This document shows, piece after piece, positions 3,553 through 63,856 of a DNA stretch of 64,000 bases. The DNA comes from Lepidodermella squamata (lineage: Eukaryota > Animalia > Gastrotricha). Every line of letters begins with the position of its first letter. Position 1 is the stretch's first letter. A program made the translations under genes and the position numbers. Below the pieces are notes generated by a model, which was given only the letters and a program-made list of their open reading frames with translations, was not told where the DNA came from and searched no databases. The stretch spans positions 1,736,001 through 1,800,000 of the forward strand of contig JBLDXI010000015.1 of the NCBI GenBank assembly GCA_047495785.1. Reading direction: 5' to 3'.

Positions 3553-3626
3553 GCCTCCTTGGCTCAGTTGGCTAGAGCGCCAGTCTCATAATCTGGAGGT
3601 CGTGAGTTCGATCCTCACAGGGGGCA
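3553..3626 (+). tRNA. tRNA-Met(CAT), elongator
   Basis: Cloverleaf; anticodon arm CCAGT-CTCATAA-TCTGG; G1-C72; T-loop TTCGATC. Confidence 0.95.
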
Positions 3627-3711
3627 GCTTCACCTTTTGACAATTAGGATCCTGATTCCGAGTTAATTCATAACGAAAGTAACAATACCCAATTAGGTTC
3701 CAGGTTCATCC

Positions 3712-3783
3712 TCCCTGATGGTCTAGTGGTTAGGATTCCGCGTTCTCACCGCGGCGGCCCGGGTTCGATTCCCGGTCAGGGAA
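3712..3783 (+). tRNA. tRNA-Glu(CTC)
   Basis: TCCCTGA/TCAGGGA acceptor; CCGCG-TTCTCAC-CGCGG. Confidence 0.95.
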
Positions 3784-3846
3784 CTTTTACTATCGCTTGG
3801 CAGAAGATCGAGGTTTTAAACGAGTGTTTGAGCTACTTAGTATCCA

Positions 3847-3919
3847 GGTTCCGTAGTGTAGTGGTTATCACGTCTCCTTCACACGGAGAAGGTCGCGGGT
3901 TCGAACCCCGCCGGAACCT
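3847..3919 (+). tRNA. tRNA-Val(CAC)
   Basis: GGTTCCG/CGGAACC acceptor; TCTCC-TTCACAC-GGAGA. Confidence 0.95.
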
Positions 3920-3992
3920 CGTCCAACATTTTTGCTACTACGATTAGGTTCCATTGTCATTAAAAGAGGATTCGGGTTCCTCTAAATCATCA

Positions 3993-4064
3993 GGGGATGT
4001 AGCTCAGTGGTAGAGCGCTTGCTTTGCATGTAAGATGTCCCGGGTTCAAACCCCGGCATCTCCA
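3993..4064 (+). tRNA. tRNA-Ala(TGC)
   Basis: G3:U70 pair; CTTGC-TTTGCAT-GTAAG. Confidence 0.95.
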
Positions 4065-4129
4065 ATTTTTCCGACCAAGAAACCGATAGAACGGCTTCAA
4101 GGATCTGTATTTGAACTCGAGTATGAACA

Positions 4130-4202
4130 GGTTCCGTAGTGTAGTGGTTATCACGTCTCCTTCACACGGAGAAGGTCGCGGGTTCGAACCCCGCCGGAAC
4201 CT
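4130..4202 (+). tRNA. tRNA-Val(CAC) occupying the Val(TAC) slot
   Basis: Identical to the other Val(CAC) copies but has Val(TAC)-type flanks. Confidence 0.95.
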
Positions 4203-4743
4203 TCACTTGTGTTTTAATCATTTAGTTCAGTTTTTATTGTATTGAACATCCTTGAGTCGTCTTTGGCTATAATTCACTTATAGACGGATCGGAGAAAATA
4301 GGTTCGGATAGGTTCCTTATTATGGTATAGCTTCCTATTTGCAATTTAATCTTTGTTCAGCCTGTCTGACGTCTGACGCTAGAGGATAGAGGCCAAACAA
4401 AGTTGGAAACATGACAAAGATACAAAGTCTAATTATTAGATATGGTGCGCCCAGCAGTTAGCGATCATTCGCCTAGCAAAATTTTATATGCGCTCAGTCA
4501 TTCCAAAGAATCACAAAAAGAATTCGATCAAAATATTGCCATTGAAAGTACAATTCGACCGAGCTTCATCGAATTCGGCTGAAATCGGAGCAAGAGCTGG
4601 CATTTCTTGAAAAATCGATAACTTTCGATAACCTGCGAATTCGGAGAAAATCGTCACGGCTTGCTCAAGTTTGACTAGAGACTAGACCTTTTTTGGCAAT
4701 AATCCGACAGATGAATCATCACAACTAAACCACAAAATTTTAT

Positions 4744-4825
4744 CGCTGCCAGTAGGATTTGAACCTACGCGCGGAGACCGCATCTGATTTCAAGTCAGAC
4801 CCCTTAACCACTCGGGCATAGTAGC
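4744..4825 (-). tRNA. tRNA-Ser(TGA), acceptor-stem variant (A4.C69 mismatch)
   Basis: Long variable arm; TCTGA-CTTGAAA-TCAGA; 5' end GCTACTA versus GCTGCTA in other copies. Confidence 0.9.
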
Positions 4826-4851
4826 TTGGTTGTAATGTTCGGTTGTAAATA

Positions 4852-5264
4852 CCGTATTTCATCGATTAATAGCCTCCCTCGAATAAAAGCCCCTCGAATA
4901 ATAGCCCGAAATTGTCGGCTATTTTGAGCATTTGATAATAAATATTAGCCCCCCCCCCCCTCGAATAATAGCCACGCCATGCCATGTCCGAAGCAGGTGG
5001 CGCGCTCGAAGAAGGGAAAAAGCTGTCCTACTTTCGCCGCCGTACACTGCTAAGCGGATTGAAGGTGGTGGACGTAAGCCGTTGTTTGTGGATGTCGAGG
5101 ATAAATTAGCAGCGTGGGTCAGACAACAGAGAATTCAGCAGCGCAAACGACTTGCGATGATGAAATTTGCCAATAACCCCCCTCGAATAATTGCCTCATT
5201 TTTTGGACCATTTTCGGAGTTTCGGAAAAAATAGCAGCCATGGCTATTATTTGATGAAATACGG
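4852..5264 (+). mobile_element. Internally deleted pogo/Tc2-like DNA transposon
   Basis: TIRs CCGTATTTCATCGATTAATAGCC / GGCTATTATTTGATGAAATACGG, TA target duplication, subterminal CCCTCGAATAA repeats, internal peptide RIEGGGRKPLFVDVEDKLAAWVRQQR resembling a CENP-B-type HTH. Absent from the same spacer in other cassettes. Confidence 0.85.
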
Positions 5265-5404
5265 TACTAGATAGCTGCTTCGATTTTTGCAACGAGAAGA
5301 ACTTTCGACATTTTCAAAGTGATTCATTACTTGGCAATAATGAAAACGGGTGCTGATTGAAAATGTTCATTCAAATATGACTGAATCGATCAAGTTTGTA
5401 ACCC

Positions 5405-5476
5405 GGCCCAGTGGCCTAATGGTAAGGCGTCGGCCTCCGGAGCCGGAGATTGTGGGTTCGAGTCCCATCTGGGTCG
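5405..5476 (+). tRNA. tRNA-Arg(CCG)
   Basis: TCGGC-CTCCGGA-GCCGG anticodon arm; G73. Confidence 0.93.
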
Positions 5477-5546
5477 CTAACTTTTACATCTTCTTGAATA
5501 CATCGATTTAACAGGAAAAATTTATCAAAATGTTCAGCAATCAGCC

Positions 5547-5618
5547 GGCTCAGTAGCTTAGTGGTAGAGCATCTGTCTTGTAAACAGAAGGTCACGGGTT
5601 CGATCCCCGTCTAGGCCT
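5547..5618 (+). tRNA. tRNA-Thr(TGT), acceptor variant (C5.A68 mismatch)
   Basis: TCTGT-CTTGTAA-ACAGA; 3' CTAGGCC versus CTGGGCC in other copies. Confidence 0.9.
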
Positions 5619-5697
5619 CGGCTTATTTTTTACCCCTAGAATCAATCATTCGATTTTCCATTAGAAAATGAGAATAGGATCTAGAGTTACCACAAGC

Positions 5698-5771
5698 GCC
5701 TCCTTGGCTCAGTTGGCTAGAGCGCCAGTCTCATAATCTGGAGGTCGTGAGTTCGATCCTCACAGGGGGCA
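5698..5771 (+). tRNA. tRNA-Met(CAT)
   Basis: Identical to 3553-3626. Confidence 0.95.
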
Positions 5772-5844
5772 GCTACATCTTTTTTGACAAAACGATACTA
5801 ATTCCTAACGAAGGTCTCTCCCCAATTGGATTCCAATTTCATCC

Positions 5845-5916
5845 TCCCTGATGGTCTAGTGGTTAGGATTCCGCGTTCTCACCGCGGCGGCCCGGGTTCG
5901 ATTCCCGGTCAGGGAA
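5845..5916 (+). tRNA. tRNA-Glu(CTC)
   Basis: Identical to 3712-3783. Confidence 0.95.
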
Positions 5917-5993
5917 CAATTTTTCTCCTTCATTTCCGAAATTATGGATTATCTCAATTACGTAATCGTACTCGGGACCCATTCAATCATCCA

Positions 5994-6066
5994 GGTTCCG
6001 TAGTGTAGTGGTTATCACGTCTCCTTCACACGGAGAAGGTCGCGGGTTCGAACCCCGCCGGAACCT
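5994..6066 (+). tRNA. tRNA-Val(CAC)
   Basis: Identical to 3847-3919. Confidence 0.95.
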
Positions 6067-6140
6067 CGTCTAACACTTTTTCCATCTTCGATAAGGTTCC
6101 GTTGCTATTAAAAGAGGATCCATGTCTCCTGAAATCATGT

Positions 6141-6212
6141 GGGGATGTAGCTCAGTGGTAGAGCGCTTGCTTTGCATGTAAGATGTCCCGGGTTCAAACC
6201 CCGGCATCTCCA
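6141..6212 (+). tRNA. tRNA-Ala(TGC)
   Basis: Identical to 3993-4064. Confidence 0.95.
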
Positions 6213-6438
6213 ATTTTTTACACCTGACGAGGTCAGATTTTAAACAAACTAGTGACCCCAAACCATCCAGACCTTGAGTGAATTATGATTGAACCGAACA
6301 ATAATATAAACACTGACGTTGATTACTTCCGTTCGATTAAGCAATGTTTGTTAAATGAATACTTGCACTGGGATTCGAAGCAAAAATTCGATTGATTGTT
6401 ATACAAGATGTCACTCGATAAACCATCTCCTTCAAACA

Positions 6439-18900: not shown

Positions 18901-21900
18901 ATATTTTAAAAAATTATCGATAATAATTTTGAATTATTCAAAATTAAAATTGAAAATTTCCAAGATTTGAAATTTTCAATTTTTCAAGGTAGAGTTTTTA
19001 ATAAGCAGGATAAATTAATCAAAATGAAAAAGCGAAGCTTCATGATACTGTAAGATTAAAAAAATATTAATTAAAAATATTTCTAGGTCAAAGAAAAAAG
19101 ATCTAAAATGAGTAGAGGTGCGAAAAAAATTCAAAGAAGGGGAAATTTATCTCGCCAATAACTTTTTGCAATACCGTAGCCTGAAGTTGAAGTAGTTGAC
19201 AACATAAGGAAAATTAACAACAACAACAATGATAATTGATCGTGCATAATAAATTAGAATAGTAAAAATTCATTTTCATGTGCTATAGGTGTTGACTAAA
19301 TTTTGAGTTCAAAAAAATGTTCGTGCTAATTTTTCCCGATAATTTTTTGTTTATCACTAACTTGCCAAGGTAACACGGTCTAAATTAACCAACAATTTAA
19401 CAATAAGAAAAATCTGAATCTTTTCGCGAACTAACCTTTTCCCAGAGCCAGTTAATTTCCGCATCACTTGGCGTGTTGTCAACCGGAACGGCCTGGTGCG
19501 ATGACCCGTCAAAAGTGGAGTGGTAACCCTGCGTCGCAGAATTCGGCCTCGCCCCAACACTCGCCTTTTGCTGCTGTTGTTGCTGCTGCTGGCCCGTAAC
19601 CGCAACAGCAGCGCCCGGGCGCTGTTGCATGCCAATAACCGGCGTCACATTATTCGACCTCGGCGTGGCCCGGCCGCCCATTTCCACCCGAATTATCTGC
19701 GAATTCGACGCAGATTTCGTCAAATTTTGCTGTTGTTGATTGAAAGCCTGATTGCTGACAATCTGGCGACCAGTCACAGGTTCCTGCTCCTGTTCGTCCA
19801 TTGTAAACAGCACTTTCCGGCGTTGCTTCGACGAATTTTCGTCCGGTTGTTTGAATTTTGTCAGCTCAATGCTATCCCGAACAGCAATCGGGCCATCTGC
19901 CGTTAGATCAGCAATGTGAACATGGCCGAATGTGACGGATTTCGAGTCTTGGTGGCCGCGTTGTAGCTGGCTATTACTACCACCCATCCGGTCGTTGTTA
20001 TGCATCGATGGCGATGACTGATGACTATGATGGCTGCTTGTTGAAATGGTTCGCTCGAGGCTTGGCGATCTTTTCAAGATCGATTTGATCACAGGAGTTT
20101 GTTTCATCATGCTGCTTGGTCCATCGATGAAATCGTTGTTTTCTGGCGCGGTTTCAGCCCTGCCGTTGCCGGCCATCGCGTGGTTCAGTTGTTGATTCGC
20201 CATGTGCTGGCTCGATTGTTGCTGATCGGCGAGGGCCGAGTCGGAGTTGTAGCGTTTCATGTTTGATAGACTCGAATTACCGCCACTTGGGTCGACGATG
20301 TTTGCGTATTTGTTCACAGGCCTGTACAGAATATAGAGAAAATGTCTTAAAAATAGAGCAAACAAATGATGTTTTAATGCTATAGATCTTTCCCAAAACT
20401 CAGCATTCGAAAGGTCTCATATTGGACGTTCTGCAAACTGCGGTTTCCCGTTCTAATCCAGAGGCAACTACATAAGAGCATTTCGAAATCAATTCAAGTA
20501 AGTGAGGAAATCCGACAGTAACCAATCGAGGGATTTAAATGAAAAATAGACCACTGTGTTGAATGAGTCAATCAGCCAAGATTATAACCCGGCCTAGTGG
20601 CCTAATGGTAAGGCGTCGGCCTCCGGAGCCGGAGATTGTGGGTTCGAGTCCCATCTGGGTCGCAAACTTTTACGTCTTCTTGAATAAATCGATTAAACAC
20701 GACAAATTTATCAAAATGTTCAGCAATCAGCCGGCTCAGTAGCTTAGTGGTAGAGCATCTGTCTTGTAAACAGAAGGTCGCGGGTTCGATCCCCGTCTGG
20801 GCCTCGGCATCTCTTTTTCCCCAGCTTTGATAAATCGATGATCAATTAAGAAATGAGGATAGGATCTAGGGTGACCACAAGCGCCTCCTTGGCTCAGTTG
20901 GCTAGAGCGCCAGTCTCATAATCTGGAGGTCGTGAGTTCGATCCTCACAGGGGACAGCTTCAACTTTTTAACAATTAGGATCCTAATTCCTAACTAATGT
21001 CACATCCAAATTAGGTTCCATCTTCATCCTCCCTGATGGTCTAGTGGTTAGGATTCCGCGTTCTCACCGCGGCGGCCCGGGTTCGATTCCCGGTCAGGGA
21101 ACTTTTGCTATAGCTTGGCAGAAGATTGAGGTTTTAAACGAGTGTTTGACGCCGGAGCTACTTAGCATCCAGGTTCCGTAGTGTAGTGGTTATCACGTCT
21201 CCTTCACACGGAGAAGGTCGCGGGTTCGAACCCCGCCGGAACCTTGTCGAAATTTTTTCCAACATCGATAAGGTTACATTGCCATTAGAAGAGGCTCCAT
21301 GTCTTCTGAAATCATGTGGGGATGTAGCTCAGTGGTAGAGCGCTTGCTTTGCATGTAAGATGTCCCGGGTTCAAACCCCGGCATCTCCAAATTTTTGAAA
21401 CTGAAATTTTTGAAAACACAAAGTTCGAAAAATTCTCTTTCTTCAAATATCTTGTCTCATTTATTAACAGGTTCCGTTGTGTAGTGGTTCATCACGTCTG
21501 CTTTACACGCAGAAGGTCGCGGGTTCGAACCCCGCCGGAACCTTGAGACTCTTTTTGGTCTATTCTACTTCCTTTGCCAGAGTTAAAGCTCGAATTCATT
21601 GCTTTTATGAGTCTTTTCATTTGCAACGCGCTATAAAACCCAACCCATAGTCCTCTGTCTTTCAACAAGAATACTTTTCATCGATCAACCAACCAAGTTC
21701 TCCATGGTTCAATTGATTTTCCAGGTGCATGAATCATTCGCGATCGATGAAGCGCCACATCCAATATTGCATCAGTCAATTTCTGCCATATAATGTCCAG
21801 CTTTGGCGTTCTCATTATATCTCAATATTTCCCACTTTACCTCAATTCGAACATTACATGCCTCGTCGCCATACCCATGCAAAACTCAATCACGAAGACC

Positions 21901-24900
21901 ATCACTGCCTCTACCAGTTCAGAGGTCAACAATTTTCTCGCAATTTTCACCGAATGCAAAACCGATGAAGACCTAGCCTTCCGCTACTTCCGTTTCCCGA
22001 GATGCATTCGACGGGCCGGTATCAAAAGAATGTTACAAATTCTCGAAGCCGGCTCACGTAATTTCAGCCTACCGAGGTTACAAGCAATTTTACGCATCGA
22101 CCAGGATCGGACCAGGGATAAATTCCTGAACCCTGTTCTGGAAAAAGCTCTCATCAAAAATAACCGTCGCTTCTCCGAGGATTTGATACATCTTGGAGCA
22201 ATTGGCTCCCTTTCCAGAGCTTTCGAAGCGGGCTGTAGTGATGATGCAATCATGAAACTTGTCGAAAATAGCGGCGATCTCGGGTTATTTGTATTCAACT
22301 ATGCCTGCAGCAACTACAGAATAGATCTCATCGAGCGACTGTTGAAGCTCGAAAAAAGCGATCGCTTCATTCGAAACCTAATTTGGTGGAAACGTGATTT
22401 CATCACAGCTAGCTGGCTGGTCAAAAGCCCTCAAACTGAAAGTATTGCCCTTTTGCTGCAAAATGATGGTCTAACAGCTCTCGATCAACTCGCTTCCATG
22501 AATTGGGATCAGTTTCCGAAGATTTGTGACGACGGCGAAACTTCTCTATTAGAATCTCTAATGCTAGCCGGAGTTCGGGCGGCTGGTTACGGGCTTCAAG
22601 TAACGGCTCTAGCTCGATTATCCACAGCTCATGAGAAGCCGCTGAATTTATTCGAAACAGATATGGTTGCCATGATGATGTCCTCTCGGGAGGACAGTTT
22701 GGTGCTGACTCATTTGAACAAAAATCTTCCAAGGCGATTTACTGAAGATTACTGCCGGGCTAAGGCTATCGCGAGTAGCGTCTTCCCAATGTCACTGCAG
22801 GTTTTATCTCGTCATGCTGTGCTAAACTGTCTGCCGAGGGGTTATGCTAGCCGGATGGGAGCTATAGACGAAGGTCTGCTGGGTCATTTACCTCAGGCAT
22901 TGCGCTCTTACCTTAAATTTAACATCGACTGATGATTGCCAAATCCTAGAATTTCCAAGGCTGGAATACTTTCTAAAATCACTAGTCAACCCCTCCGAGG
23001 TTGTGATAAACTAGTCTTGAAGAATGCTTCTATTGCTTTTCAATTGCACTTGCGACTACTTCGAATTTTGACGACAGAAAATGGAGCATGCTAAAAGAAA
23101 TAAAAAGCGATTGCGAGGCATATGATTTTACAGTCTATTGAAGTAGATCATTGAGAATCTATCATTTTTGGGTAATTATAACAAAATGTTCGCTGCCAGT
23201 AGGATTTGAACCTACGCGCGGAGACCGCATCTGATTTCAAGTCAGACCCCTTAACCACTCGGGCATAGCAGCTTGGATGCTTGTGAGCTGGTTTGATGAT
23301 TGAATCGACAAACGATCGTTGAAATCGACAAAGGAAAATTTCTCACAATTTCAAAGCGAGTCATTACTTAAAAATAATTATATCGGATGATGATTGAAAT
23401 CGATTATTATAGGGAATAACTCAATCATATACGTTTCTAACCCGGCCTAGTGGCCTAATGGTAAGGCGTCGGCCTCCGGAGCCGGAGATTGTGGGTTCGA
23501 GTCCCATCTGGGTCGCTAACTTTTTCATCCTCTTGATTAGATCGATTAAAAAACAAATATTTACCAAAATATTTCAGCATTCAGCCGGCTCAGTAGCTTA
23601 GTGGTAGAGCATCTGTCTTGTAAACAGAAGGTCACGGGTTCGATCCCCGTCTGGGCCTCGGCTTCTCTTTTTGGCCTATCAACCGATAGATTTTTAACTA
23701 GACGATTAGAATAGGATCAAGAGGTACTACAGGCGCCTCCTTGGCTCAGTTGGCTAGAGCGCCAGTCTCATAATCTGGAGGTCGTGAGTTCGATCCTCAC
23801 AGGGGGCAGCTTCAATTTTTGTTGCCGTAAGAAACCAAATTCTTGACCCAATTGCCATAGTAGGCCGTGAAGGTTATTATCCCTGATGTTCTAGTGGTTA
23901 GGATTCCACTAGGCGGCCCTGGTTCGATTCCCTTAGGCAAAAATTTGACCTCAAATTTACTCGAGTGTTTGATGCCAGAGCTACTTATCATCCAGGTTCC
24001 GTAGTGTAGTGGTTATCACGTCTCCTTCACACGGAGAAGGTCGCGGGTTCGAACCCCGCCGGAACCTCGTCCAACATTTTTCCAACTTCGATAAAGGTTT
24101 CATTGCCATTAAAAGAGGATCCATTTCCGTTGAAATCATGTGGGGATGTAGCTCAGTGGTAGAGCGCTTGCTTTGCATGTAAGATGTCCCGGGTTCAAAC
24201 CCCGGCATCTCCAAATTTTTGAAGATAGAGCTAATTTTAGGAAATTCACTATCTTCAAAGGACTGTATTCGATCGAATATGAACAGGTTCCGTTGTGTAG
24301 TGGTTCATCACGTCTGCTTTACACGCAGAAGGTCGCGGGTTCGAACCCCGCCGGAACCTTAAGACTTTTTCCTACGATCTAGCCTAAATCCAAGTCCTTA
24401 GGAAAACCGGTTTCCTATACATCGCGACTCATTTTTAATTAAACTATAAGTTGAAAAAGCTTAAAAACTTGACAATTTACCTGGTCAGGTCGGTGTAAGC
24501 AGTTTCGGGGGGTATTTGGGTTCCAACGCGGCCCGACGGCGGCCGAGCGCCAACTGGAATGTTAGAAGACGAAGTAGCAATCTGAGAAGACGGCTTGCTA
24601 TTGGCATTCACATTATTGTTATTACTGCTATTATTGGCAGGCGACACTTGGCCGAAAAGACCAGTATCGCCAGAACTAGTGGAAGAAGGCTGGGCAAATG
24701 CCACATTTGGCTTGTTATTCACAGAAATAATCTGAGTCTTCTGCTGCTGTTGGCCAGCGTTGTGGTCAGAGGTATTCGCCACCAACTCGTCACTAGCCAC
24801 TGATTTACCACTTGGAATTTGAAAATTGAGCGTTATAGCCGACGCGACTTGCTTCGTAGAGCCGAGATTTTGCGCGGCGGATTTCATTTCATTAATCTGC

Positions 24901-37443: not shown

Positions 37444-37517
37444 GGATGAACATGAGTCTTGATTGAGATGTGACAGTCATTTGGAATTAGGATCCTGATT
37501 CTCAAAAAAGTTGAAGC

Positions 37518-37929: not shown

Positions 37930-39003
37930 TCAAGATTGACGAGATGTACCAATCTTCAACGTAAATGAGAACGTTCGATACATGAGCCCGGCATACTCAG
38001 CATCTTCGTACATCGCAGAAGAAGACAACAGTTCCATTCCCGCAGTGATAGGTGCCAGTTCATCCAGGTTAGGGTTTTGCATGGCTTCCTCAAAACTGAC
38101 AGCTATCTTTGAGTTATCGTAATTCCAGGAAGCAGCTTTAATTGTGCAGTCGACGGTTAGATTAACGGATTGAGTAGACGGCATACACGGTACTTCGTGA
38201 TTTAGACGAGGCATCCAAATAACAAATCCGTCAGGGTAAACCCATACATCGGCATCCAACAAATTGTTCTTCTGATCAGCAGCTCCGCCATTGAAGCTAT
38301 TTTTAATACACTCATTAGGATCACATTTATCAGTCAAATACAGCAAACTAACTCATTGACGAATGTGATATCAGGCGTCCAAACTTTCCTGGCCGGCAGC
38401 GTGATAGAATCAACTTTTCCGAACGAAGATGGGTCCCATGTCAGAGCTGGATCATTCCACGTCATCTTTGGTCTCGATGCTATTTTTGCACGATTATTTG
38501 AATCTAAGCTGATGATTTGAACCAAATAGAGCATCAAAGTTACGTTGACAGCTTCAGAACTATACAGAGGGATCTATAGAGATAATCCTTGGGAAATTGC
38601 AAACAAATTACGCATTTGAGACAGGTCGTCCTACTGTACCCTGTTCTTCAGCTGTGCGAATCAAATACTTTGCCAGTTCACGTTCAGGTAATTCTGAAAA
38701 ATAAGATTACTTCAAATATAGGTAGAAAAGGCACCCAATTCCAGAACATTCGGTGAACTCTTGAGCGAGTTTGAAATTAATGGAGTACTCTAACTTTTAG
38801 GCAGAATGAAGTAAATATTTTGAAACCCCGTTGAAATATTACTGACGGAACTCTATACTATCAAGTTTCGCTCAAGTAAAGCGATTGATCTGGAGTATTT
38901 ATTAGGGTACCTCTCCCATCACTATTATTGTAGTAAGTGACTTACTGATTGCTAATGTTTGATAGATGATCGCTAGAAATACGGCCAGGTACAGTTTAGC
39001 CAT
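37930..39003 (-). CDS. Soluble Cys-loop receptor ligand-binding-domain protein (AChBP-like, ~237 aa)
   Basis: Exons 39003-38946, 38693-38612, 38559-38353, 38296-37930. Signal peptide; RPVSNASEAVNV, WNDPALTWDP, VWTPDI, C-x12-C loop, SWNYD; stop directly after beta10 with no TM helices. Confidence 0.85.
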
Positions 39004-40716: not shown

Positions 40717-40764
40717 ACCTTCCGCGTGTAAAGCAGACGTGATGAACCACTACACAACGGAACC
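40717..40764 (-). pseudogene. tRNA-Val(TAC) pseudogene, 3'-truncated
   Basis: T arm and acceptor 3' strand missing. Confidence 0.85.
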
Positions 40765-40840
40765 TGTTCATGCAGGAGATCAAATAATACAGAGCTTTGA
40801 ATATGGAGAATTCGATATCAGTTTCTATGTTTAAAAACAT

Positions 40841-40912
40841 TGGAGATGCCGGGGTTTGAACCCGGGACATCTTACATGCAAAGCAAGCGCTCTACCACTG
40901 AGCTACATCCCC
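40841..40912 (-). tRNA. tRNA-Ala(TGC)
   Basis: Reverse complement of consensus. Confidence 0.95.
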
Positions 40913-40986
40913 ACATGATTTCAACGGTTATAGATCCTCTTTTAATGGCAATGAAACCTTTATCGCAGTTGGAAAAATGTTGGACG

Positions 40987-41059
40987 AGGTTCCGGCGGGG
41001 TTCGAACCCGCGACCTTCTCCGTGTGAAGGAGACGTGATAACCACTACACTACGGAACC
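40987..41059 (-). tRNA. tRNA-Val(CAC)
   Basis: Reverse complement of consensus. Confidence 0.95.
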
Positions 41060-41129
41060 TGGATGCTAAGTAGCTCCGGCGTCAAACACTCGTTTAAAAC
41101 CTCAATCTTCTGCCAAGCTATAGCAAAAG

Positions 41130-41201
41130 TTCCCTGACCGGGAATCGAACCCGGGCCGCCGCGGTGAGAACGCGGAATCCTAACCACTAGACCATCAGGG
41201 A
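41130..41201 (-). tRNA. tRNA-Glu(CTC)
   Basis: Reverse complement of consensus. Confidence 0.95.
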
Positions 41202-41280
41202 GGATGAACATGGACTCTAATTGTGATATGACCTTCGTTTGGATAATTAGTTTGGATCCCATCGTCAAAAAAGTTGAAGC

Positions 41281-41354
41281 TGCCCCCTGTGAGGATCGAA
41301 CTCACGACCTCCAGATTATGAGACTGGCGCTCTAGCCAACTGAGCCAAGGAGGC
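41281..41354 (-). tRNA. tRNA-Met(CAT)
   Basis: Reverse complement of consensus. Confidence 0.95.
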
Positions 41355-41424
41355 GCTTGTGGCCACCTTGAGTCTCATTTCCATCTTCTAACTGAAAATC
41401 GAGCTCACAACTGAAAAAACCTCG

Positions 41425-41495
41425 AGGCTTAGACGTGAATGGAACGCGAGACCTTATTTACAACATCCCTGAGCTAATGAGCTCTTGGCTGAGCC
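41425..41495 (-). pseudogene. tRNA-Thr pseudogene, heavily decayed
   Basis: Thr slot with remnants AGGCTTAGACG...TTTACAA...CTGAGCC. Confidence 0.7.
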
Positions 41496-41561
41496 GGCAG
41501 ATAGCTTAACATTTTGATGACTCTTTTTCAATCGATTTATTCAAGAGAAAGAAAAAGTTAG

Positions 41562-41624
41562 CGACCCAGATGGGACTCGAACCCACAATCTCCGGCTCCG
41601 GCCTTACCATTAGGCCACTGGGCC
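41562..41624 (-). pseudogene. tRNA-Arg pseudogene
   Basis: 9-nt deletion removing the 5' side of the anticodon arm. Confidence 0.85.
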
Positions 41625-42199
41625 CGGATAGATGTCTGTTTTAAGTAACCTATTTCCCCGTAATTAGCATAATATGGCTAGCAATTTGGCTAGCAATCAT
41701 TACCCATTTCACTGCTTTTATTGCATCTCCATTGGCTAAATATTTATTTAATAGAGAATGTCCGAGGAAGGGACTATAACCGGGCTTCCCACGGCTTCCC
41801 CGGTAAGGCAGTTGCCTGGGTGCCCGATGAATATTATTGATACTTCGGACAAAAAGTACAGGGGGCTCTTACTATCAAAGGGCGCGCGGAAATCGTTCTC
41901 CTAAGAACAGCCAAAGACTCCCCCTTTCATTTTTTTCAATTTGATTTTTCAATTTTCGATCGGATATCATTTTCTATGTTTCAAGAAAAAGGTTATTCTG
42001 CGTTGCAGTGGCGGCAACGTGGCAAAAATGCGTGGGTGCGAGCTCAAACATTAATGCTGTTAAGAAGGAGAGTGGGATCAGAAAATCGCCGCTGTCAGTT
42101 TCTGGGGCCAATCTCCGGCACTGGCAAATCGGTTAGTGTTACAAGTTCAACATTTCGGATTTGACGGATGAATCGTCACAGCTAATTCAAAAATGTTAT

Positions 42200-42281
42200 C
42201 GCTGCCAGTAGGATTTGAACCTACGCGCGGAGACCGCATCTGATTTCAAGTCAGACCCCTTAACCACTCGGGCATAGCAGC
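42200..42281 (-). tRNA. tRNA-Ser(TGA)
   Basis: Identical to consensus. Confidence 0.95.
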
Positions 42282-42435
42282 TTGGTGGCTAACGAGTTGA
42301 TAGCTGGTCCGATATTTGAATCGAAAGCTTTAGACGAAAACCTTCAGAACGATCATTACTTGGGAACAATGATATCGGATGCCGATTGAAATCGCTTATT
42401 ATGGGGAATAACTCAGTCCTGTGAGTTTGTAACCC

Positions 42436-42507
42436 GGCCCAGTGGCCTAATGGTAAGGCGTCGGCCTCCGGAGCCGGAGATTGTGGGTTCGAGTCCCATC
42501 TGGGTCG
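42436..42507 (+). tRNA. tRNA-Arg(CCG)
   Basis: Identical to consensus. Confidence 0.93.
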
Positions 42508-42579
42508 ATAATTTTTTTATCCTCTTGGATCAACCGATTTGGCGCAGGAAAAATGTATTGAATTACTCAGCTATCAGCC

Positions 42580-42651
42580 GGCTCAGTAGCTTAGTGGTAG
42601 AGCATCTGTCTTGTAAACAGAAGGTCACGGGTTCGATCCCCGTCTGGGCCT
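42580..42651 (+). tRNA. tRNA-Thr(TGT)
   Basis: Identical to consensus. Confidence 0.95.
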
Positions 42652-42731
42652 CGGCTTCTCTTTTTCCCCTAGTATCAATAAATCGATAGTTCAATTAGGA
42701 AAAGAGAGCGGGACCCAGGGTGACCACAAGC

Positions 42732-42805
42732 GCCTCCTTGGCTCAGTTGGCTAGAGCGCCAGTCTCATAATCTGGAGGTCGTGAGTTCGATCCTCACAGG
42801 TGGCA
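42732..42805 (+). tRNA. tRNA-Met(CAT), U4.U69 mismatch variant
   Basis: 3' end AGGTGGC. Confidence 0.88.
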
Positions 42806-42901
42806 GCTTCAACTTTTTTGACTATGGCATCCTAATTCAGGAGGATTTGTTGCTTGGATAGAATTATCGATTTGTTTGTTGCCAGAGACACCTAATACCC
42901 A

Positions 42902-42974
42902 GGTTCCGTAGTGTAGTGGTTATCACGTCTCCTTCACACGGAGAAGGTCGCGGGTTCGAACCCCGCCGGAACCT
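42902..42974 (+). tRNA. tRNA-Val(CAC)
   Basis: Identical to consensus. Confidence 0.95.
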
Positions 42975-43553
42975 CGTCGATGATTTTTCCGACGTCGATC
43001 AAGTGATAGTTGCTATCCAGGGGAACTGTTCTCATCTTTTTTGGGTACAGTTTCAGTTTCTTTTGGAATTGGTGGGTAGGGAATAAGAGGAGCGCCGCAA
43101 GGTACAGTAATACCATATTTCGGTACTAGTAATGTTATTACCGACACGGATCAGCGGAAGTCTCTTTGCTTACACTTGAGAGCGAGTTCTAGTCCATATG
43201 TAAAGGCACACACACTATTTCCTTACTTGGATTGTGCGCTACGAATTCAAATAAGGAAATCCTCGATAAATCACCTTGAAAACATACAATTCCAACTCTT
43301 CCGTTTTTATTCATGTTTTTATACAATTTGTTACAATAACCAAAAGCCTTCTTGGTAGGCGACAACGCGTCATATTGCCAATTGAAGCCCTTAAACTACC
43401 ACGAAATGAAATACCACAAACTGAAGACGAAATATACTATATTAACACTGCTTTCAATTGGCATATCTGTAATGAGAGATGGAAATTCATTTGCGCAACT
43501 GCAGTATCTGCGACACAGCACGATTTGGTGAGAGCAAGTGAATCAATATGAAT

Positions 43554-44295
43554 TTAAATTTTATCAATGTCAATGCCGCCTTTTTGTTTCGTAGAAGATT
43601 TCTGGTACTGATTGTGGTAGCTAATGTCTTCTTCCTCGTCCGATTCAGAATCACTCGAGGGAAGCATACCGGCCAGCGCGTTTTGATTGCCGACTGGGAC
43701 ACCACCAGTTCGTGTCCGGCCTTCGTAGCCCGAAGTGCCTTCTCCCTCTGAGTCTGACCCAGATTCTGATTCCGAGCTACCTTCGGCTCCCTCTTCTTCG
43801 TAGTTGAAAACAATGTTATCGTCACCTCCGTCTTCCTCATTGATTTTGGCTGCAAACAAGATAAGAGCATGAGAAACCAAATTAAGAGATTATATTCAAG
43901 TTTACTTGTGTTAGGAATTTCATTCATTGACATCAGCTTGCGAGCTTCGTCGGGGGTGTATTTTAAAATAACATCGGCTTTGCCGTCTTGATACTCTCGG
44001 AGACCAATAAGGATAATATCACCGGTGTTGATCCAGACCTTTTTGCGGAGTTTGCCTCGGATGTGACAAAGCCGCTTTACGCCATCGAAACAACTGGCTT
44101 CAAGACGACCGTTGCCCAACATCTTAGAAACTTGCGCGTATTCTAAATGAATAACTTATTTAGTAAATAAGGAAGTAATAAATAAAAATACTCACGTTGT
44201 AGAGCATCGCGATAAATAAGTTCTCGCTTTAAATCCTCATTCTCGTTCTTACCACGACGACGATTTTTACCTCCCTTTCCCTTATTCTTCGGCAT
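43554..44295 (-). CDS. EIF1A: Eukaryotic translation initiation factor 1A with extended acidic C-tail (~210 aa)
   Basis: Exons 44295-44196, 44142-43906, 43849-43554. [45 protein letters not shown], terminal DIDKI. Confidence 0.95.
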
Positions 44296-46627
44296 GACGA
44301 ATGACTACTGTAATAATAAATCTATGAACACAATATAAATAAATATCAACATGGGCGATTAGAAACATTGAACATCAGATTCGTATTAGTATTTCAGATA
44401 ATTAGTAAGCAAAAATATCTCCTTCTCTCATTATCATTCACAAACATCGCGAAACAATTCCCTGTGAACACATGCTCAACGTCATATAAGGAACCAAGAT
44501 GAATCACCCAAATAAGTGATGCAATAAGTGGAATTGAGGCATGCATAGCCGACCTCCGAGCTTACAGGCTCGCAGGCAAGCATAGCATAAAAAATACTCA
44601 AATAACTGGATCTTTTTGAGAAATGTAAACAAAATGAAAGTTCAGAGCAAAATTCTCCCGGTAGCGTCGTTAAATCAGAAGAGGTATATTTTGCAATCAA
44701 ATTTTTTATCGTATCAGCATGTGGGGAATTCGACATGAGGATTTTAACAAAGTGTAAGAATAAAAAATCTGGAAAATGTATATGACCAGCTGATAGTGCC
44801 CTTGTTTCATCATTAACTAAGCTTGATCACAATTTTGAACGCAAGCGTTAATGGAGAGAGGAGAACAAGTTGACGGTAGTTTACCCCACAACCGATGAGG
44901 GAACAATGTCCATGTATTGATTAATCATGAGTAGTGAGTAAGAAGTAAGAGCATCTCTGATATGCCAAAATGCGATCAGTTAATAGAAGCAGGTATCTAA
45001 ATCGTAGAACGGGATTTAATCCGCAATTGACAGGTCAACGAATGAATAAGCTTTGAGAAATTGCGAGTCTATTCAGGAGTTCAAACGGCAGATTTCAGAT
45101 ATCTATGAATAACAGCAAATAGGAGCCAAGCAGGTAACTGGGCTGCCTTCAGTCAAAAATTAGGCCAAAAACGAGGTTCAAGACGTAGAATTTCGTCGCA
45201 ACTTCCATTCATCGGCAGGCAAACTCTGCGCCCGCTCAGATGCCGGCGCGCGAGCGCGTAACAAATCAAACCATTTTTTTATTTTCTGCGAAGACTAAAT
45301 TTTTGTGTTTAGTGCGAGAATGGTCAATTTCTTTTATGGCAAAAGTTGAAGTTCAGGTTAGCGTTAATAATTGATCACAAAGAAAAACAACGACGGCCAA
45401 CAACTCGTCCCGAACATCGACAGCCAAAAGTTTGTCCAGGTGTCAAAAGCGGTTCCTGGTATGTCTCGTGTGTCGGTATTCGGTCGTACATGCACCACAC
45501 TTTGCACTCAACACAGTTTTTCCGCAATTCTGAATGTTAGAATATTTATGTGTGCGTGTGTGCTGTATGCTGTATGCCTGTTGAGTAACATCGAGTGATA
45601 GTGATCTATCGCTGGATTTAACCTCGAAATCCTATATTCGTTGTCGTAAAGGCTGTTTGCCACCGAATTCTACCGCCATACATGCTCTGGTTTATTTTTG
45701 TAGCTATCAATTAATTAGCTGTTCCCACCAATTGCTCACTGCTCATACCTCTTGATATTTTGATTCAAATACTTGCCACTAGAACCCACGCCCTTCTCCA
45801 TAGCGGATAGCACTATGTAGTGGGACATCGCTGTGGATTGATCGTCGAAAGTCGCCGTAATTTGCATTTGGCTACCTTAGGGCATAGCGGGCGAAATTTC
45901 AGCTCATCAATTGGGTACCGTTATGCCTCCTGAAACCTGAAACCAGACAAGCGTCACGAAAATTTCTCCACACCTTGCTTCTGGCTGAGTGTCTTGTGGA
46001 GACAATCATAGTGGTTGATCCTTGATCCTTGGGATAATCTTGGACATTCAAGGATCAAACTCAATCAAAACTTGGAATTAATATCCAGATATTTATTTCC
46101 TGCTATTGTATCGCTTCCTAGGTTCAGGACCATCCGACCTCGGCGAAGATTGCAATTGAGCAAAAAATCCTCTCGGCGTGTTCTTCGAACCATAATTTAT
46201 ATCCATTTATATGAAGTATGAATTTAAGTTCAGACTAAAGGATGAGCGTTTGTAGCGGAAAATTAATTGTCTATCCCGACAACACCTTAGCTATAGTATT
46301 CTGCGCACGGCTCTAGTAGCTGACACTCAGCTTCATTTTCCTTTATCCCTTACGAACCAGCTTCTCAGATTTTAATGACAGCTAATAACAATAATTCGAA
46401 AGGTTTTATTGCGGCATTTCTCATGATTGCGGGGATATGAGAACTGGAATCAGAACCATTAACAGAAAATTCAAGAAAATCCTGCGTCCCTGAAAAATGG
46501 AGATGACTTCACGTTATGTATTTCACGTTAACAATTATTTGCCTGGGCAATTTCGTGGATTATAGATGTACCGAGATCTATCGTCATTTTTCTATGTTTT
46601 TTGCTTTGTTTTTAGATTTGATTAAAA

Positions 46628-61700: not shown

Positions 61701-61876
61701 TGGCGCTTTACGACACCAGCATTTCGCCCCTACCTCCCTCGCCATCCCCCTCGCCGTCGCCTAAAGAGGACTACTCTCACTTCCGAAATCCTAGTCGAGT
61801 GCCGGCTAACCTACGGCAAACTGCCTCCTCGAATCATCCTTCATCGTCGAATTCACACCATTCCTTTTTCCACTGA
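58741..61876 (+). CDS. Long coiled-coil protein with Pro/Ser-rich C-terminus, family unassigned
   Basis: Phase-compatible exons 58741-59185, 59598-61038, 61263-61497, 61553-61876; heptad-rich K/E/L/A composition. Confidence 0.8.
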
Positions 61877-62917
61877 ATTTTCGTTGGGAAAAATGTTTAA
61901 AAAATATTGAGGTGGACTTTTTTCTATCAAAACTCCGGTTTCATAATATTTCGTCAGACATTGACCGTATTTTTTTTGCAAACATTTTTGCTTCTTCATT
62001 CTTGTTGTTGTTCGATTGCCTGCCCTTGCCAATTTTCTGAAACTTGCGATGTATATTTATAACGCTTTGACGATGAGTGATTCATGAATGAGCAGATATT
62101 AATTGAAAAAACTAGTGTAAACATTTTTTTGCTCATTTTTTTTAATTAAAAAAAGAAACATCATATTATCTTACATTGTTGTTGCAAATACAAACGTTGA
62201 TATATTATAATATGTACTTATGTGTTAACGAGAATGCTTCGATTGCTATGCAAATAACTAATTGAACGTCTATATTCGTAAGGTTAACTGGTCGAGTGCT
62301 TTTTACGCTTGATCTTTATTGATTGATTGATTGATGGATAAATTGATCGGCTTGAAATCAGTATGCACGCAGTTGAGATTGATCTAAAATAAAAACTGAA
62401 AAACTGCGAAATGAATGGGGTTTTTTCCATGCGTTGGAAGCGCGTTAGCCAAGAGTTTGCACCTGATGGGAAAAGATTTATTTTGATCAGGTTTTGATCA
62501 GTCGGCGATAGCACTTTCTCCCCGAGACCGAGAAAATATTATAAATTTTTATAAATTTATTAAAATTTTATTGATCCGACGCCGAAAAATGGCGCCAATT
62601 ATTTCAGGAAGAGAAAACAAAGAACAAGCAAAGAAAATGTTCAAAACGAGGCTTCCTAAATTTCCTTTACTGGTTGGATCCCACCGACCCGACAGTGGCG
62701 GGGTGTGGTCAGCTAGTAAGCGAAACGAAACGCTGTATAATCTGTACTTGAATTCGCAAAACTCATCACAGGCCGCTAATAAAAGGAAAAATTCAATGTT
62801 ATAGAAAATGTTATCGAACTTGCCTTATAGCCGAATTTAACGTTAAATTTTGCCCAAGTCGGCTAATGCAGTGACTTCAAAATCAAAGAAGAATTCTGAA
62901 TTTTTGGTGAAAAAAGG

Positions 62918-62991
62918 AGGTTCCGGCGGGGTTCGAACCCGCGACCTTCTGCGTGTAAAGCAGACGTGATGAACCACTACACAACGGAACC
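62918..62991 (-). tRNA. tRNA-Val(TAC)
   Basis: Reverse complement of consensus. Confidence 0.95.
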
Positions 62992-63057
62992 TGTTGATAC
63001 CGAGGATCGAATGCACAGCTTTGAAGATTCGTTAAAATTAGTTCTAGTTTCAAAAAT

Positions 63058-63129
63058 TGGAGATGCCGGGGTTTGAACCCGGGACATCTTACATGCAAAG
63101 CAAGCGCTCTACCACTGAGCTACATCCCC
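63058..63129 (-). tRNA. tRNA-Ala(TGC)
   Basis: Reverse complement of consensus. Confidence 0.95.
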
Positions 63130-63205
63130 ATGTGATTTCAAGAGATATATGAATCCTACTTTAAACGGTAGCCAAGTCTTACTAGATTTTGAAAAATGTT
63201 GGACG

Positions 63206-63278
63206 AGGTTCCGGCGGGGTTCGAACCCGCGACCTTCTCCGTGTGAAGGAGACGTGATAACCACTACACTACGGAACC
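63206..63278 (-). tRNA. tRNA-Val(CAC)
   Basis: Reverse complement of consensus. Confidence 0.95.
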
Positions 63279-63347
63279 TGGATACTAGTAACTCTGATGG
63301 CAAACACTCGAGAGAAACCTGCATGCTCTGCGAAGCAACAGTAAAAA

Positions 63348-63419
63348 TTCCCTGACCGGGAATCGAACCCGGGCCGCCGCGGTGAGAACGCGGAATCCTA
63401 ACCACTAGACCATCAGGGA
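63348..63419 (-). tRNA. tRNA-Glu(CTC)
   Basis: Reverse complement of consensus. Confidence 0.95.
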
Positions 63420-63489
63420 GGATGAACATGGACTCTAAGTGAGACGGGACTATCCTTGAGAATTAGGTCCCCGTTGATAAAAATAAAGC

Positions 63490-63563
63490 TGCCCCCTGTG
63501 AGGATCGAACTCACGACCTCCAGATTATGAGACTGGCGCTCTAGCCAACTGAGCCAAGGAGGC
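63490..63563 (-). tRNA. tRNA-Met(CAT)
   Basis: Reverse complement of consensus. Confidence 0.95.
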
Positions 63564-63642
63564 GCTTGTGGTCACCCTGGATATTATGCTCATTTCCTAA
63601 TTGAACGCCGAATGGTTGATGTTAGGGAAAAAAGAGGTGCCG

Positions 63643-63714
63643 AGGCCCAGACGGGGATCGAACCCGCGACCTTCTGTTTACAAGACAGATGCTCTACCAC
63701 TAAGCTACTGAGCC
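63643..63714 (-). tRNA. tRNA-Thr(TGT)
   Basis: Reverse complement of consensus (G49 variant, as in copy C). Confidence 0.95.
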
Positions 63715-63784
63715 GGCTGATGGCTGAGAAGCTCGATCAATTTTCCAATCTGAGGCAAGATGTTCAGAGGAATAAAAAAGTTAG

Positions 63785-63856
63785 CGACCCAGATGGGACT
63801 CGAACCCACAATCTCCGGCTCCGGAGGCCGACGCCTTACCATTAGGCCACTGGGCC
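63785..63856 (-). tRNA. tRNA-Arg(CCG)
   Basis: Reverse complement of consensus. Confidence 0.93.

What the first reader, a model, noticed from the sequence alone, without database searches (positions are those of the whole stretch)
3553..63856. Fixed-order eight-tRNA cassette dispersed nine times among and inside single-copy genes
Seen: Ser(UGA, divergent)-Arg(CCG)-Thr(UGU)-Met(CAU)-Glu(CUC)-Val(CAC)-Ala(UGC)-Val(UAC), about 1.2 kb with ~70-nt spacers, occurs as copies A-I in both orientations, giving 54 full-length tRNA genes in 64 kb. The tRNA bodies are almost invariant while the spacers diverge, and each gene is followed by a T-run terminator, so these look like functional Pol III units rather than SINEs. 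No TIRs, TSDs or polyA bound the cassette. Known: multi-isotype tRNA repeats exist as pure tandem arrays (Xenopus, human 1q23, Entamoeba). Inference: here the unit has become an interspersed genome-organising module (boundary, recombination node or dosage unit). This is the best candidate for an undescribed system in the window.
Basis: partly seen in the sequence, partly recalled or inferred. Interest (0 to 1): 0.88.

Follow-up and report, generated by a model that had tools for sequence, protein, structure and literature searches.

The report
Scattered eight-tRNA gene cassette field
An unidentified small animal genome carries about a hundred whole or partial copies of an eight-tRNA gene block scattered among protein genes over more than a megabase. 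They were spread by ordinary block duplication and kept alike by copy-to-copy exchange, so this is a striking but conventional tRNA gene cluster and not a new kind of system.

Summary
The window holds 54 intact tRNA genes in nine whole or partial copies of Ser(UGA, opposite strand)/Arg(CCG)-Thr(UGU)-Met-Glu(CUC)-Val(CAC)-Ala(UGC)-Val(UAC). Gene bodies are 97.6-99.7% identical and spacers 54-70%. T-runs follow 127 of 130 genes in the surrounding 260 kb. I found no terminal inverted repeats.

Three points need correcting:
- No copy is complete inside the window.
- No cassette is shown to lie inside a gene.
- The family is regional: contig C15 at about 1.0-2.4 Mb, plus C18 and C75.

The cassettes were spread by segmental duplication.
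- With cassettes masked, their flanks are paralogous. One ion-channel gene plus cassette occurs twice at 78% identity.
- Tandem gene-plus-cassette units and conserved Val|Ser junctions point to an ancestral tandem repeat of about 1.5-1.7 kb.
- In a related species TBC1D31 and eIF1A are adjacent without tRNAs; here 8.9 kb with four copies lies between them.

Spacer similarity is uncorrelated from one spacer to the next, which indicates frequent gene conversion.

This is a new member of a known kind, the heterogeneous tRNA gene cluster. The "genome-organising module" reading is unsupported. The scan had already noted tRNA arrays and tRNA-carrying transposons elsewhere in this genome, and the mosaicism in this window. 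Expression and long-read checks could not be run.

The parts
3551..4276 (+). Copy A: Met, Glu(CUC), Val(CAC), Ala(UGC), then a Val whose body is CAC-type in UAC-type flanks. The left edge lies 2 nt before Met.
4205..4743 (+). Tandem-junction spacer Val|Ser between copies A and B. It is homologous to the F|E junction and to junctions at C15 1.711 and 1.719 Mb.
4744..6227 (+). Copy B: Ser(UGA) on the minus strand, a 579-nt Ser-Arg spacer (elsewhere 153-171 nt), then Arg, Thr, Met, Glu, Val(CAC), Ala. Val(UAC) is missing.
20561..21554 (+). Copy C: Arg, Thr, Met, Glu, Val(CAC), Ala, Val(UAC). Ser is missing.
23183..24370 (+). Copy D: Ser (minus strand), Arg, Thr, Met, a broken Glu remnant at 23880-23932, Val(CAC), Ala, Val(UAC).
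34966..36632 (-). Copy E: Val(UAC), Ala, a 576-nt self-complementary insert at 35188-35763, Val(CAC), Met, Thr, Arg, and Ser on the plus strand. Glu is deleted.
36849..37622 (-). Copy F: Val(UAC), Ala, Val(CAC), Glu, Met. It is joined in tandem to E. Its Met-side edge is a deletion junction.
37619..39059 (-). Cys-loop ligand-gated ion-channel gene block between F and G. It is paralogous, at 77.7% over 1474 nt, to C15 1694617-1696014, which also abuts a cassette.
40717..41632 (-). Copy G: truncated Val(UAC) at 40717-40765, Ala, Val(CAC), Glu, Met, Thr lost, and a decayed Arg at 41561-41624.
42189..43004 (+). Copy H: Ser (minus strand), Arg, Thr, Met, Val(CAC). It is an inverted partner of E, with 329 nt 99% complementary.
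62911..64000 (-). Copy I: Val(UAC), Ala, Val(CAC), Glu, Met, Thr, Arg. Its Ser lies just beyond the window end. It is the only complete unit in 260 kb.
30815..34647 (+). TBC1D31, single copy in the genome. In a related species it is the direct neighbour of eIF1A.
43487..44301 (-). eIF1A, single copy in the genome. Here it is separated from TBC1D31 by 8.9 kb holding copies E-H and the ion-channel gene.

Best explanation
This is one stretch of a regional field of nuclear, Pol III-transcribed tRNA genes.

Origin. The ancestor was a tandem repeat of about 1.5-1.7 kb. It had Ser(UGA) on one strand and Arg-Thr-Met-Glu-Val-Ala-Val on the other, followed by a Val|Ser junction spacer.

Spread. Copies were scattered over more than a megabase of one chromosome region by repeated tandem, inverted and displaced duplication of multi-kilobase blocks. 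These blocks carried a cassette together with neighbouring genes, notably receptor and ion-channel genes. Deletions and small insertions then trimmed the copies into 2-12-gene pieces.

Maintenance. Purifying selection keeps the gene bodies the same. Frequent gene conversion between copies also does so, switching partner within the identical tRNA bodies.

Function. The most likely role is bulk supply of eight tRNA species.

Shown here: the genes and their terminators, the contrast between bodies and spacers, the paralogous flanks, the mosaicism, and the insertion relative to a related species.

Inferred: transcription, the selective reason, and the order of events.
For: Genes:
- 54 canonical tRNAs in the window and 130 in 260 kb.
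- T-runs after 127 of 130.
- Bodies 97.6-99.7% identical against 54-70% for spacers.
- The 35 nt upstream of each gene type are better conserved than the rest of the spacer (weak evidence, ungapped comparison).

Ancestral tandem repeat:
- The Val(UAC)|Ser junction occurs 8 times in 260 kb.
- Its spacer is homologous between loci, and a trace lies beyond the Ser of copy I.

Block duplication:
- Window 37619-39059 matches C15 1696014-1694617 at 77.7%, running right up to the cassette edge.
- Tandem gene-plus-cassette units lie at 1635.8-1650.5 kb and at 1670.0-1680.1 kb (the latter 82.5% identical).
- 1700408-1702406 matches 1800918-1802907 at 81.6%.
- Orientation comes in runs: 7 runs over 21 loci, P=0.034.

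Insertion into conserved gene order:
- Four contigs of one related species have macoilin-eIF1A-TBC1D31 adjacent with no tRNA.
- Both genes are single-copy here.
- The paralogous block (78% DNA identity) is more alike than the orthologous coding DNA (68-72%). This favours insertion in this lineage.

Gene conversion:
- Pairwise identity is uncorrelated between neighbouring spacers (r from -0.22 to 0.30) and does not depend on distance (rho -0.05).
- Copies C and G are 0.99 alike in the Glu-Val spacer but 0.75 and 0.79 in the spacers beside it.
- Copies E and H are 0.99 alike in the Ser-Arg spacer but 0.71 in the next one.
- A Val(CAC) body sits in Val(UAC) flanks in copy A.

Birth and death:
- 15 truncated remnants, not counting Met.

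Literature:
- tRNA gene clusters arise repeatedly, with local duplication suspected (PMC2888827).
- tRNA families evolve in concert and spawn local and non-local copies (PMC4981973).
- Arrays grow by unequal crossing-over (PMC9584435).
Against:
- Inside the window most DNA between cassettes has no detectable paralogue, so block duplication is demonstrated for only some loci.
- Flanks at 55-70% identity are at the limit of what BLAST detects, so the true share of copies spread with their flanks is unknown.
- Some near-identical spacer pairs have flanks that differ immediately outside the outermost gene. Conversion explains this, but so could another copying mechanism.
- Only one related species was available, so insertion versus loss rests on a rate argument.
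- Only 260 kb of the field could be read.
Confidence: 0.72

Rival explanations
1. The cassette is itself mobile. It would move as a transposase-less DNA transposon, or as circles excised from a tandem array that re-insert at breaks or at solitary tRNA-Met genes.
For: - Earlier notes of the scan report TIR-bounded elements of 1.2-1.4 kb with 7-8 tRNA genes elsewhere in this genome.
- Many pieces are circular permutations that span the Val|Ser junction and begin or end at Met. Met is the commonest gene, with 25 of 130.
- Repeat homology usually stops within about 60 nt of the outermost gene.
Against: - No terminal inverted repeats were found at any copy examined.
- Break points vary and sometimes fall inside genes.
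- Flanks are paralogous where they can be detected.
- Orientation is locally coherent, not random.
- Homology ending at the outermost gene is expected anyway. Spacers at 55-70% identity align only when anchored between identical tRNA bodies.
Confidence: 0.1
2. The cassettes are kept for an architectural role. They would act as TFIIIC/Pol III-bound barriers or insulators that partition receptor genes into separate chromatin domains, which is the first reader's 'genome-organising module'.
For: - tRNA genes have barrier and enhancer-blocking activity in yeasts and mammals, and the 1q23 tRNA repeat lies at a domain boundary (PMC4041453).
- Cassettes here lie between genes about every 12 kb, often beside receptor or ion-channel genes.
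Against: - Nothing in the sequence requires this.
- Spacing is irregular, from 2 to 40 kb.
- Copies are of very different completeness, and many are broken.
- Their positions follow from block duplication.
- No test of chromatin was possible.
Confidence: 0.1
3. The interleaving is an assembly artefact: unique contigs joined wrongly through a collapsed tandem array.
For: - Repeats are a classic cause of misjoins.
- The long-read check could not be run.
- The best DNA holder, run X1, holds only 0.66 of the sampled words and may be the source sample itself.
Against: - Copies differ by 12-25% overall and each has private deletions and insertions, so they are not confusable near-identical repeats.
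- The genes on either side of block E-H are direct neighbours in a related species, so the path through the block rejoins the correct flank.
- The ion-channel-plus-cassette adjacency exists twice, as diverged paralogues.
- The contig is 5.2 Mb long.
Confidence: 0.03
4. Most copies are silent leftovers of a decaying array, and their bodies look intact only because gene conversion from a few active copies keeps overwriting them.
For: - Conversion is pervasive.
- About one gene in ten is visibly broken.
- Clustered tRNA genes can be partly heterochromatic, as discussed for 1q23 in PMC4041453.
- Identical Ser(UGA) genes exist in other regions.
Against: - 126 of about 141 cassette genes in 260 kb are intact and have terminators.
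- Proximal upstream sequence is conserved for each gene type.
- Arg(CCG) was found almost only in this family, so some of these copies must be the working genes.
Confidence: 0.12

Closest known systems
Heterogeneous nuclear tRNA gene clusters interspersed with protein genes (human 6p22, 2.7 Mb with six clusters among butyrophilin and ZSCAN genes; zebrafish chromosome 4 long arm)
   Same: Many tRNA genes of several isotypes are concentrated in a megabase-scale region and interleaved with protein-coding genes, including tandemly duplicated gene families. The region is dynamic and prone to duplication (PMC4041453, PMC11075544, PMC2888827).
   Different: Here one fixed-order eight-gene unit with a divergent Ser accounts for almost all genes of the field: 126 of 130 in 260 kb. 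The genome is small (121 Mb) and the density very high, about one tRNA gene per 2 kb.
Tandem multi-isotype tRNA arrays (Entamoeba arrays; human/mouse 1q23.3 repeat of 7.3 kb with five tRNA genes; Arabidopsis Ser-Tyr-Tyr array; Phytophthora di- and trimeric arrays)
   Same: A repeat unit holds several different tRNA genes in fixed order and orientation. Only the tRNA bodies are conserved between copies. Growth is by unequal exchange (PMC4041453, PMC2886086, PMC9584435).
   Different: The window holds at most two units head to tail. Only the Val|Ser junction remnants show the tandem past, and the copies are now separated by unique genes.
Concerted evolution and turnover of tRNA multigene families
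   Same: Bodies are kept identical within a genome, there is birth and death of copies, anticodon change arises by conversion or point change, and copies are both local and non-local (PMC4981973, PMC2997554).
   Different: The fixed neighbours let the conversion tracts be seen directly, as spacer-by-spacer mosaics.
tRNA-cargo DNA transposons noted elsewhere in this genome by the scan (unchecked notes)
   Same: Similar size (1.2-1.4 kb) and number of tRNA genes (7-8).
   Different: Those are described as bounded by inverted repeats and inserted in introns. The copies here have no such ends. Whether the gene content is the same could not be checked.

Membership tests
Eukaryotic Pol III type-2 tRNA genes | Canonical cloverleaf that scores above the tRNA family threshold | tested here: met
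   54 of 54 score 57.7-73.9 bits against a gathering score of 29. ARAGORN agrees.
Eukaryotic Pol III type-2 tRNA genes | Run of four or more T just downstream as terminator | tested here: met
   127 of 130 within 25 nt, median offset 6 nt, against a background of 18%.
Eukaryotic Pol III type-2 tRNA genes | Transcription by Pol III and mature tRNA produced | not testable with these tools
Heterogeneous tDNA cluster (PMC2888827 definition) | Adjacent tRNA genes less than 1000 nt apart, from more than one isoacceptor family | tested here: met
   Spacers are mostly 60-85 nt, and there are eight anticodons for seven amino acids.
Tandem tRNA array (Entamoeba / 1q23 type) | Many units head to tail with a uniform period | tested here: not met
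   At most two adjoining units (A|B, F|E). There are 31 units in 22 separate loci over 260 kb.
tRNA-derived SINE | tRNA-like head fused to an unrelated body with an A-rich or simple-repeat tail, and decayed tRNA structure | tested here: not met
   The genes are full-length canonical tRNAs, each ending in its own T-run, with no tails.
Non-autonomous DNA transposon with tRNA cargo | Terminal inverted repeats at constant ends | tested here: not met
   No bounding inverted repeats. The ends vary and coincide with gene edges or fall inside genes.
Non-autonomous DNA transposon with tRNA cargo | Target-site duplications and empty sites | tested here: inconclusive
   The one orthologous 'empty' site is too diverged to place the ends to the base.
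Segmentally duplicated multigene region under concerted evolution | Paralogy extends into the flanks of the repeated genes | tested here: met
   At least five block pairs at 64-85% identity abut cassettes.
Segmentally duplicated multigene region under concerted evolution | Mosaic similarity between copies (conversion tracts) | tested here: met
   The nearest neighbour changes from spacer to spacer, and the correlation between neighbouring spacers is about zero.
tDNA insulator / boundary element | TFIIIC/Pol III-dependent barrier activity or position at a domain boundary | not testable with these tools
   No chromatin data.

The most novel reading that the evidence does not exclude
The identical tRNA bodies may act as portable homology that drives non-allelic recombination. 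The cassette field would then be the engine that duplicates and shuffles the neighbouring receptor and ion-channel genes, and possibly also insulates them from one another. On this reading it would be a self-reinforcing tRNA-and-receptor co-amplification system in a genome that may hold on the order of ten thousand tRNA genes.
Probability: 0.15. Interest if true: 0.6.

Novelty: new member of a known kind. Interest (0 to 1): 0.36.

Why it matters
It gives a clear natural example of how a multi-gene tRNA unit passes from a tandem repeat to an interspersed field. Because the neighbours are fixed, gene-conversion tracts between dispersed tRNA genes can be read directly from the spacers.

It also flags this small animal genome as unusually rich in tRNA genes. 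A rough first look gave about 14,660 tRNA-like candidates in 121 Mb. That is worth a proper genome-wide census and a test of which copies are used.

It does not reveal a new kind of genetic system.

Tried and rejected
Read-level check.
- Two kinds of in-session analysis did cover them. A within-window repeat scan by reference included them. Local scripts on sequence already held included them, except, where Met was left out on purpose.

Genome DNA.
Only C15 1.60-1.86 Mb could be mapped, and C18 and C75 could not be read.

Homology searches.
- The open reading frames beside copies C and D (21793-22932 and 24477-25580) gave no homologues.
- 2347-3489 gave only weak hits without a family.
- 8044-9447 gave nothing usable in the Atlas.
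- These are therefore unconfirmed as genes and gave no further synteny tests.

Searches for the cassette elsewhere.
- Two scans of JGI metagenome contigs for the Arg-Thr and Val-Ala adjacencies found nothing.
- A distant TBC1D31 contig (L022) was uninformative.

Ideas rejected.
- The transposon reading, for lack of inverted repeats and constant ends.
- The idea that integration happens at solitary Met genes. Break points are of several kinds, and the syntenic site in the relative has no Met gene.
- The idea that duplicated blocks end at cassettes. Masking the cassettes creates such ends by itself.

The organism could not be identified. Run and organism names are coded.

Full report
**1. The observation**

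Rfam's tRNA model finds the same 54 at 57.7-73.9 bits, plus a weak 55th at 41562-41624.

They form nine whole or partial copies of one unit. Ser(UGA) lies on one strand. On the other, starting 153-171 nt away, lie Arg(CCG), Thr(UGU), elongator Met(CAU), Glu(CUC), Val(CAC), Ala(UGC) and Val(UAC), with 60-85-nt spacers. A complete unit measures 1.17 kb.

No copy is complete inside the window. Copy I is complete only with a Ser just past the window end. The others have 4-7 genes, and four truncated remnants lie among them.

**2. The genes look functional**

I joined the window to 196 kb of neighbouring contig (C15 1,600,001-1,860,000). This stretch holds 130 tRNA genes in 22 loci, and all but four belong to this unit.

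- Gene bodies are 97.6-99.7% identical pairwise, while the spacers between them are only 54-70% identical.
- A run of at least four T follows 127 of 130 genes within 25 nt, against 18% of random 25-mers.
- The 35 nt before each gene type are better conserved than the rest of the spacer. This comparison is ungapped, so it is weak evidence.

These are the marks of Pol III tRNA genes under constraint, not of SINEs. Transcription itself could not be tested.

**3. Where the family lies**

The window is C15:1,736,001-1,800,000 of a 121-Mb assembly in 151 contigs.

- Cassette matches lie almost wholly on C15 between about 1.0 and 2.4 Mb, with one on C75.
- Arg(CCG) genes also occur on C18 at 0.23-0.31 Mb, followed by Thr at the usual spacing, and on C75, C32 and C3.
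- Identical Ser(UGA) genes are scattered over other regions, such as C29 at 0.76-1.14 Mb.

A rough first look gave about 14,660 tRNA-like candidates in the genome. Another tRNA type is scattered in the same way on C1, C3 and C19. Earlier notes of the scan report tandem arrays of a 20-tRNA unit, and tRNA-carrying transposons, on other pieces of this genome.

The cassette field is therefore regional. It is one of several forms of heavy tRNA gene amplification in this genome.

**4. The genes between the copies**

Pfam identifies the following:
- a CAP-domain gene at 6.5-7.3 kb
- a family-3 GPCR at about 9.9-13.9 kb
- TBC1D31 at 30.8-34.6 kb
- a Cys-loop ion-channel gene at 37.7-39.1 kb
- eIF1A at 43.5-44.3 kb
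- macoilin at 46.6-48.8 kb

TBC1D31 and eIF1A are single-copy in the genome. The open reading frames next to copies A, C and D have no or only weak homologues, so they are unconfirmed as genes. No cassette interrupts a gene whose extent can be fixed.

**5. Not a transposon**

Repeat homology ends at the terminator T-runs of the outermost genes, or inside a gene, and the ends differ from copy to copy. No inverted repeats bound copies C, D or I.

**6. How the copies spread**

Inside the window only the cassettes repeat. When the cassettes are masked in the 260-kb stretch, however, their flanks prove to be paralogous.

- The ion-channel block between F and G (37619-39059) matches C15 1696014-1694617 at 77.7% over 1474 nt. 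It runs right up to a cassette at both places. The edge of copy F is a deletion junction that joins the first 8 nt of an Arg gene to 28 nt before Met.
- Two tandem duplications have a gene-plus-cassette period. One lies at 1635.8-1650.5 kb with a period of about 8.4 kb. The other lies at 1670.0-1680.1 kb with a period of about 5.7 kb and 82.5% identity.
- A 2-kb block beside a cassette at 1.700 Mb recurs beside copy I at 1.801 Mb, at 81.6% identity.
- Cassette orientation comes in runs: 7 runs over 21 loci, permutation P=0.034.
- The Val(UAC)|Ser junction occurs eight times. Its spacer is homologous between loci, with a trace beyond the Ser of copy I.

This points to an ancestral tandem repeat of about 1.5-1.7 kb.

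Spacers at 55-70% identity align only because they are anchored between identical tRNA bodies. An equally old flank beyond the last gene would go undetected, so "unique flanks" is weak evidence against block duplication.

**7. Comparison with a relative**

Four contigs from ENA metagenomes are 99.5-99.9% identical to one another, so they come from one species. Its TBC1D31 is 69% identical in protein to ours.

These contigs carry macoilin, eIF1A and TBC1D31 as direct neighbours, and ARAGORN finds no tRNA gene on any of them. The window is collinear with them, except that 8.9 kb holding copies E-H and the ion-channel gene lies between TBC1D31 and eIF1A.

The inserted block's paralogue is more similar (78% DNA identity) than the orthologous coding DNA (68-72%). 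This favours insertion in this lineage after the split, though it rests on a rate argument.

Upstream of TBC1D31 the gene order is broken. The relative has ALG11 there, whereas here ALG11 lies on C32 and C7.

The restored gene order across E-H also argues strongly against a misjoin.

**8. Exchange between copies**

The nearest relative of a copy changes from one spacer to the next.
- C and G are 0.99 alike in the Glu-Val spacer but 0.75 and 0.79 in the spacers beside it.
- E and H are 0.99 alike in the Ser-Arg spacer but 0.71 in the next.
- One copy at 1.620 Mb matches a copy at 1.703 Mb in one spacer, and a copy at 1.720 Mb two spacers on.

Over all pairs, identity in one spacer does not predict identity in the next (r from -0.22 to 0.30), nor does physical distance (rho -0.05). 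In copy A a whole Val(CAC) body sits in Val(UAC) flanks. Two copies 185 kb apart share the same two-base change that makes Glu(UUC).

This is gene conversion, with the identical tRNA bodies as the switch points.

**9. Comparison with what is known**

- Heterogeneous tRNA gene clusters arise repeatedly in eukaryotes and are regarded as dynamic products of local duplication (PMC2888827).
- The human 6p22 region has six tRNA clusters spread over 2.7 Mb among butyrophilin and ZSCAN gene families. The 1q23 repeat has five tRNA genes per unit, with only the tRNA bodies conserved between human and mouse (PMC4041453).
- Zebrafish chromosome 4 concentrates tRNA genes among protein genes (PMC11075544).
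- Phytophthora has thousands of tRNA genes in arrays, thought to have grown by unequal crossing-over (PMC9584435).
- tRNA families are known to evolve in concert and to spawn local and non-local copies (PMC4981973).

What is unusual here is the length and fidelity of the eight-gene order, and the density in a small genome. The mechanism is ordinary.

**10. What could not be done**

After that I sent none of those letters to any search tool. They were covered only by a within-window repeat scan by reference and by local scripts.
- No RNA run is on record.
- Only 260 kb of the field could be read.
- The organism stayed unidentified.

**11. Verdict**

The functional-gene and recombination parts of the interpretation are supported. 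The "undescribed genome-organising module" is not supported. This is a new member of a known kind, of moderate interest.

Noticed in passing
window 33127-34081 (inverted arms about 33359-33448 and 33713-33790): TBC1D31 has about 950 extra bases here where the related species has an unbroken reading frame. The extra stretch holds a roughly 430-nt palindromic, MITE-like element. A 68.6% similar copy lies at C15 1666144-1666502.
   Followed up: partly
window 35188-35763: A 576-nt insert inside copy E, between Ala and Val(CAC). It is self-complementary: positions 29-543 match their own reverse complement at 73%.
   Followed up: partly
window 4129-4204: The last Val of copy A has a complete Val(CAC) body in the flanks typical of Val(UAC). 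This is an isoacceptor switch by gene conversion.
   Followed up: yes
C15 1657860 and 1843176 (L007 and L020): Two cassette copies 185 kb apart carry Glu(UUC) in place of Glu(CUC), through the same two-base change in the anticodon loop.
   Followed up: partly
C15 1.704-1.733 Mb (L012-L015), e.g. L012:4387-5646: A cluster of at least six paralogous Cys-loop ion-channel genes of about 1.2 kb, 63-78% identical, alternates with cassette pieces.
   Followed up: partly
whole genome G000 (C1 1.04-1.33 Mb, C3 1.52-1.87 Mb, C19, C29 0.76-1.14 Mb): A rough first look gave about 14,660 tRNA-like candidates in 121 Mb. Other identical tRNA genes are scattered at kb-to-tens-of-kb spacing in both orientations on other contigs, so interspersed tRNA fields seem to be a genome-wide habit.
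   Followed up: no
G000 C32:381175-382563 and C7:1967052-1968440: ALG11, which neighbours TBC1D31 in the related species, lies elsewhere here. It is present twice, and both copies are 60% identical to the relative's. TBC1D31 and eIF1A are single-copy.
   Followed up: no
C15 1688511-1688744 (L010) and 1692731, 1718608: The only tRNA genes in 260 kb that do not belong to the cassette are an identical convergent pair of Leu(UAG) genes 70 nt apart and two Trp(CCA) genes.
   Followed up: no
window 14857-15021 and 55730-55909: A short repeat of about 160 nt, inverted between two AT-rich stretches. It is the only repeat in the window outside the cassettes. Its nature is unknown.
   Followed up: no
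window 21793-22932, 24477-25580, 19397-20365, 8044-9447: Long open reading frames (322-467 aa) beside the cassettes have no Pfam family, and two of them have no homologue in a search of 5.8 billion proteins. They are either lineage-specific genes or not genes.
   Followed up: partly
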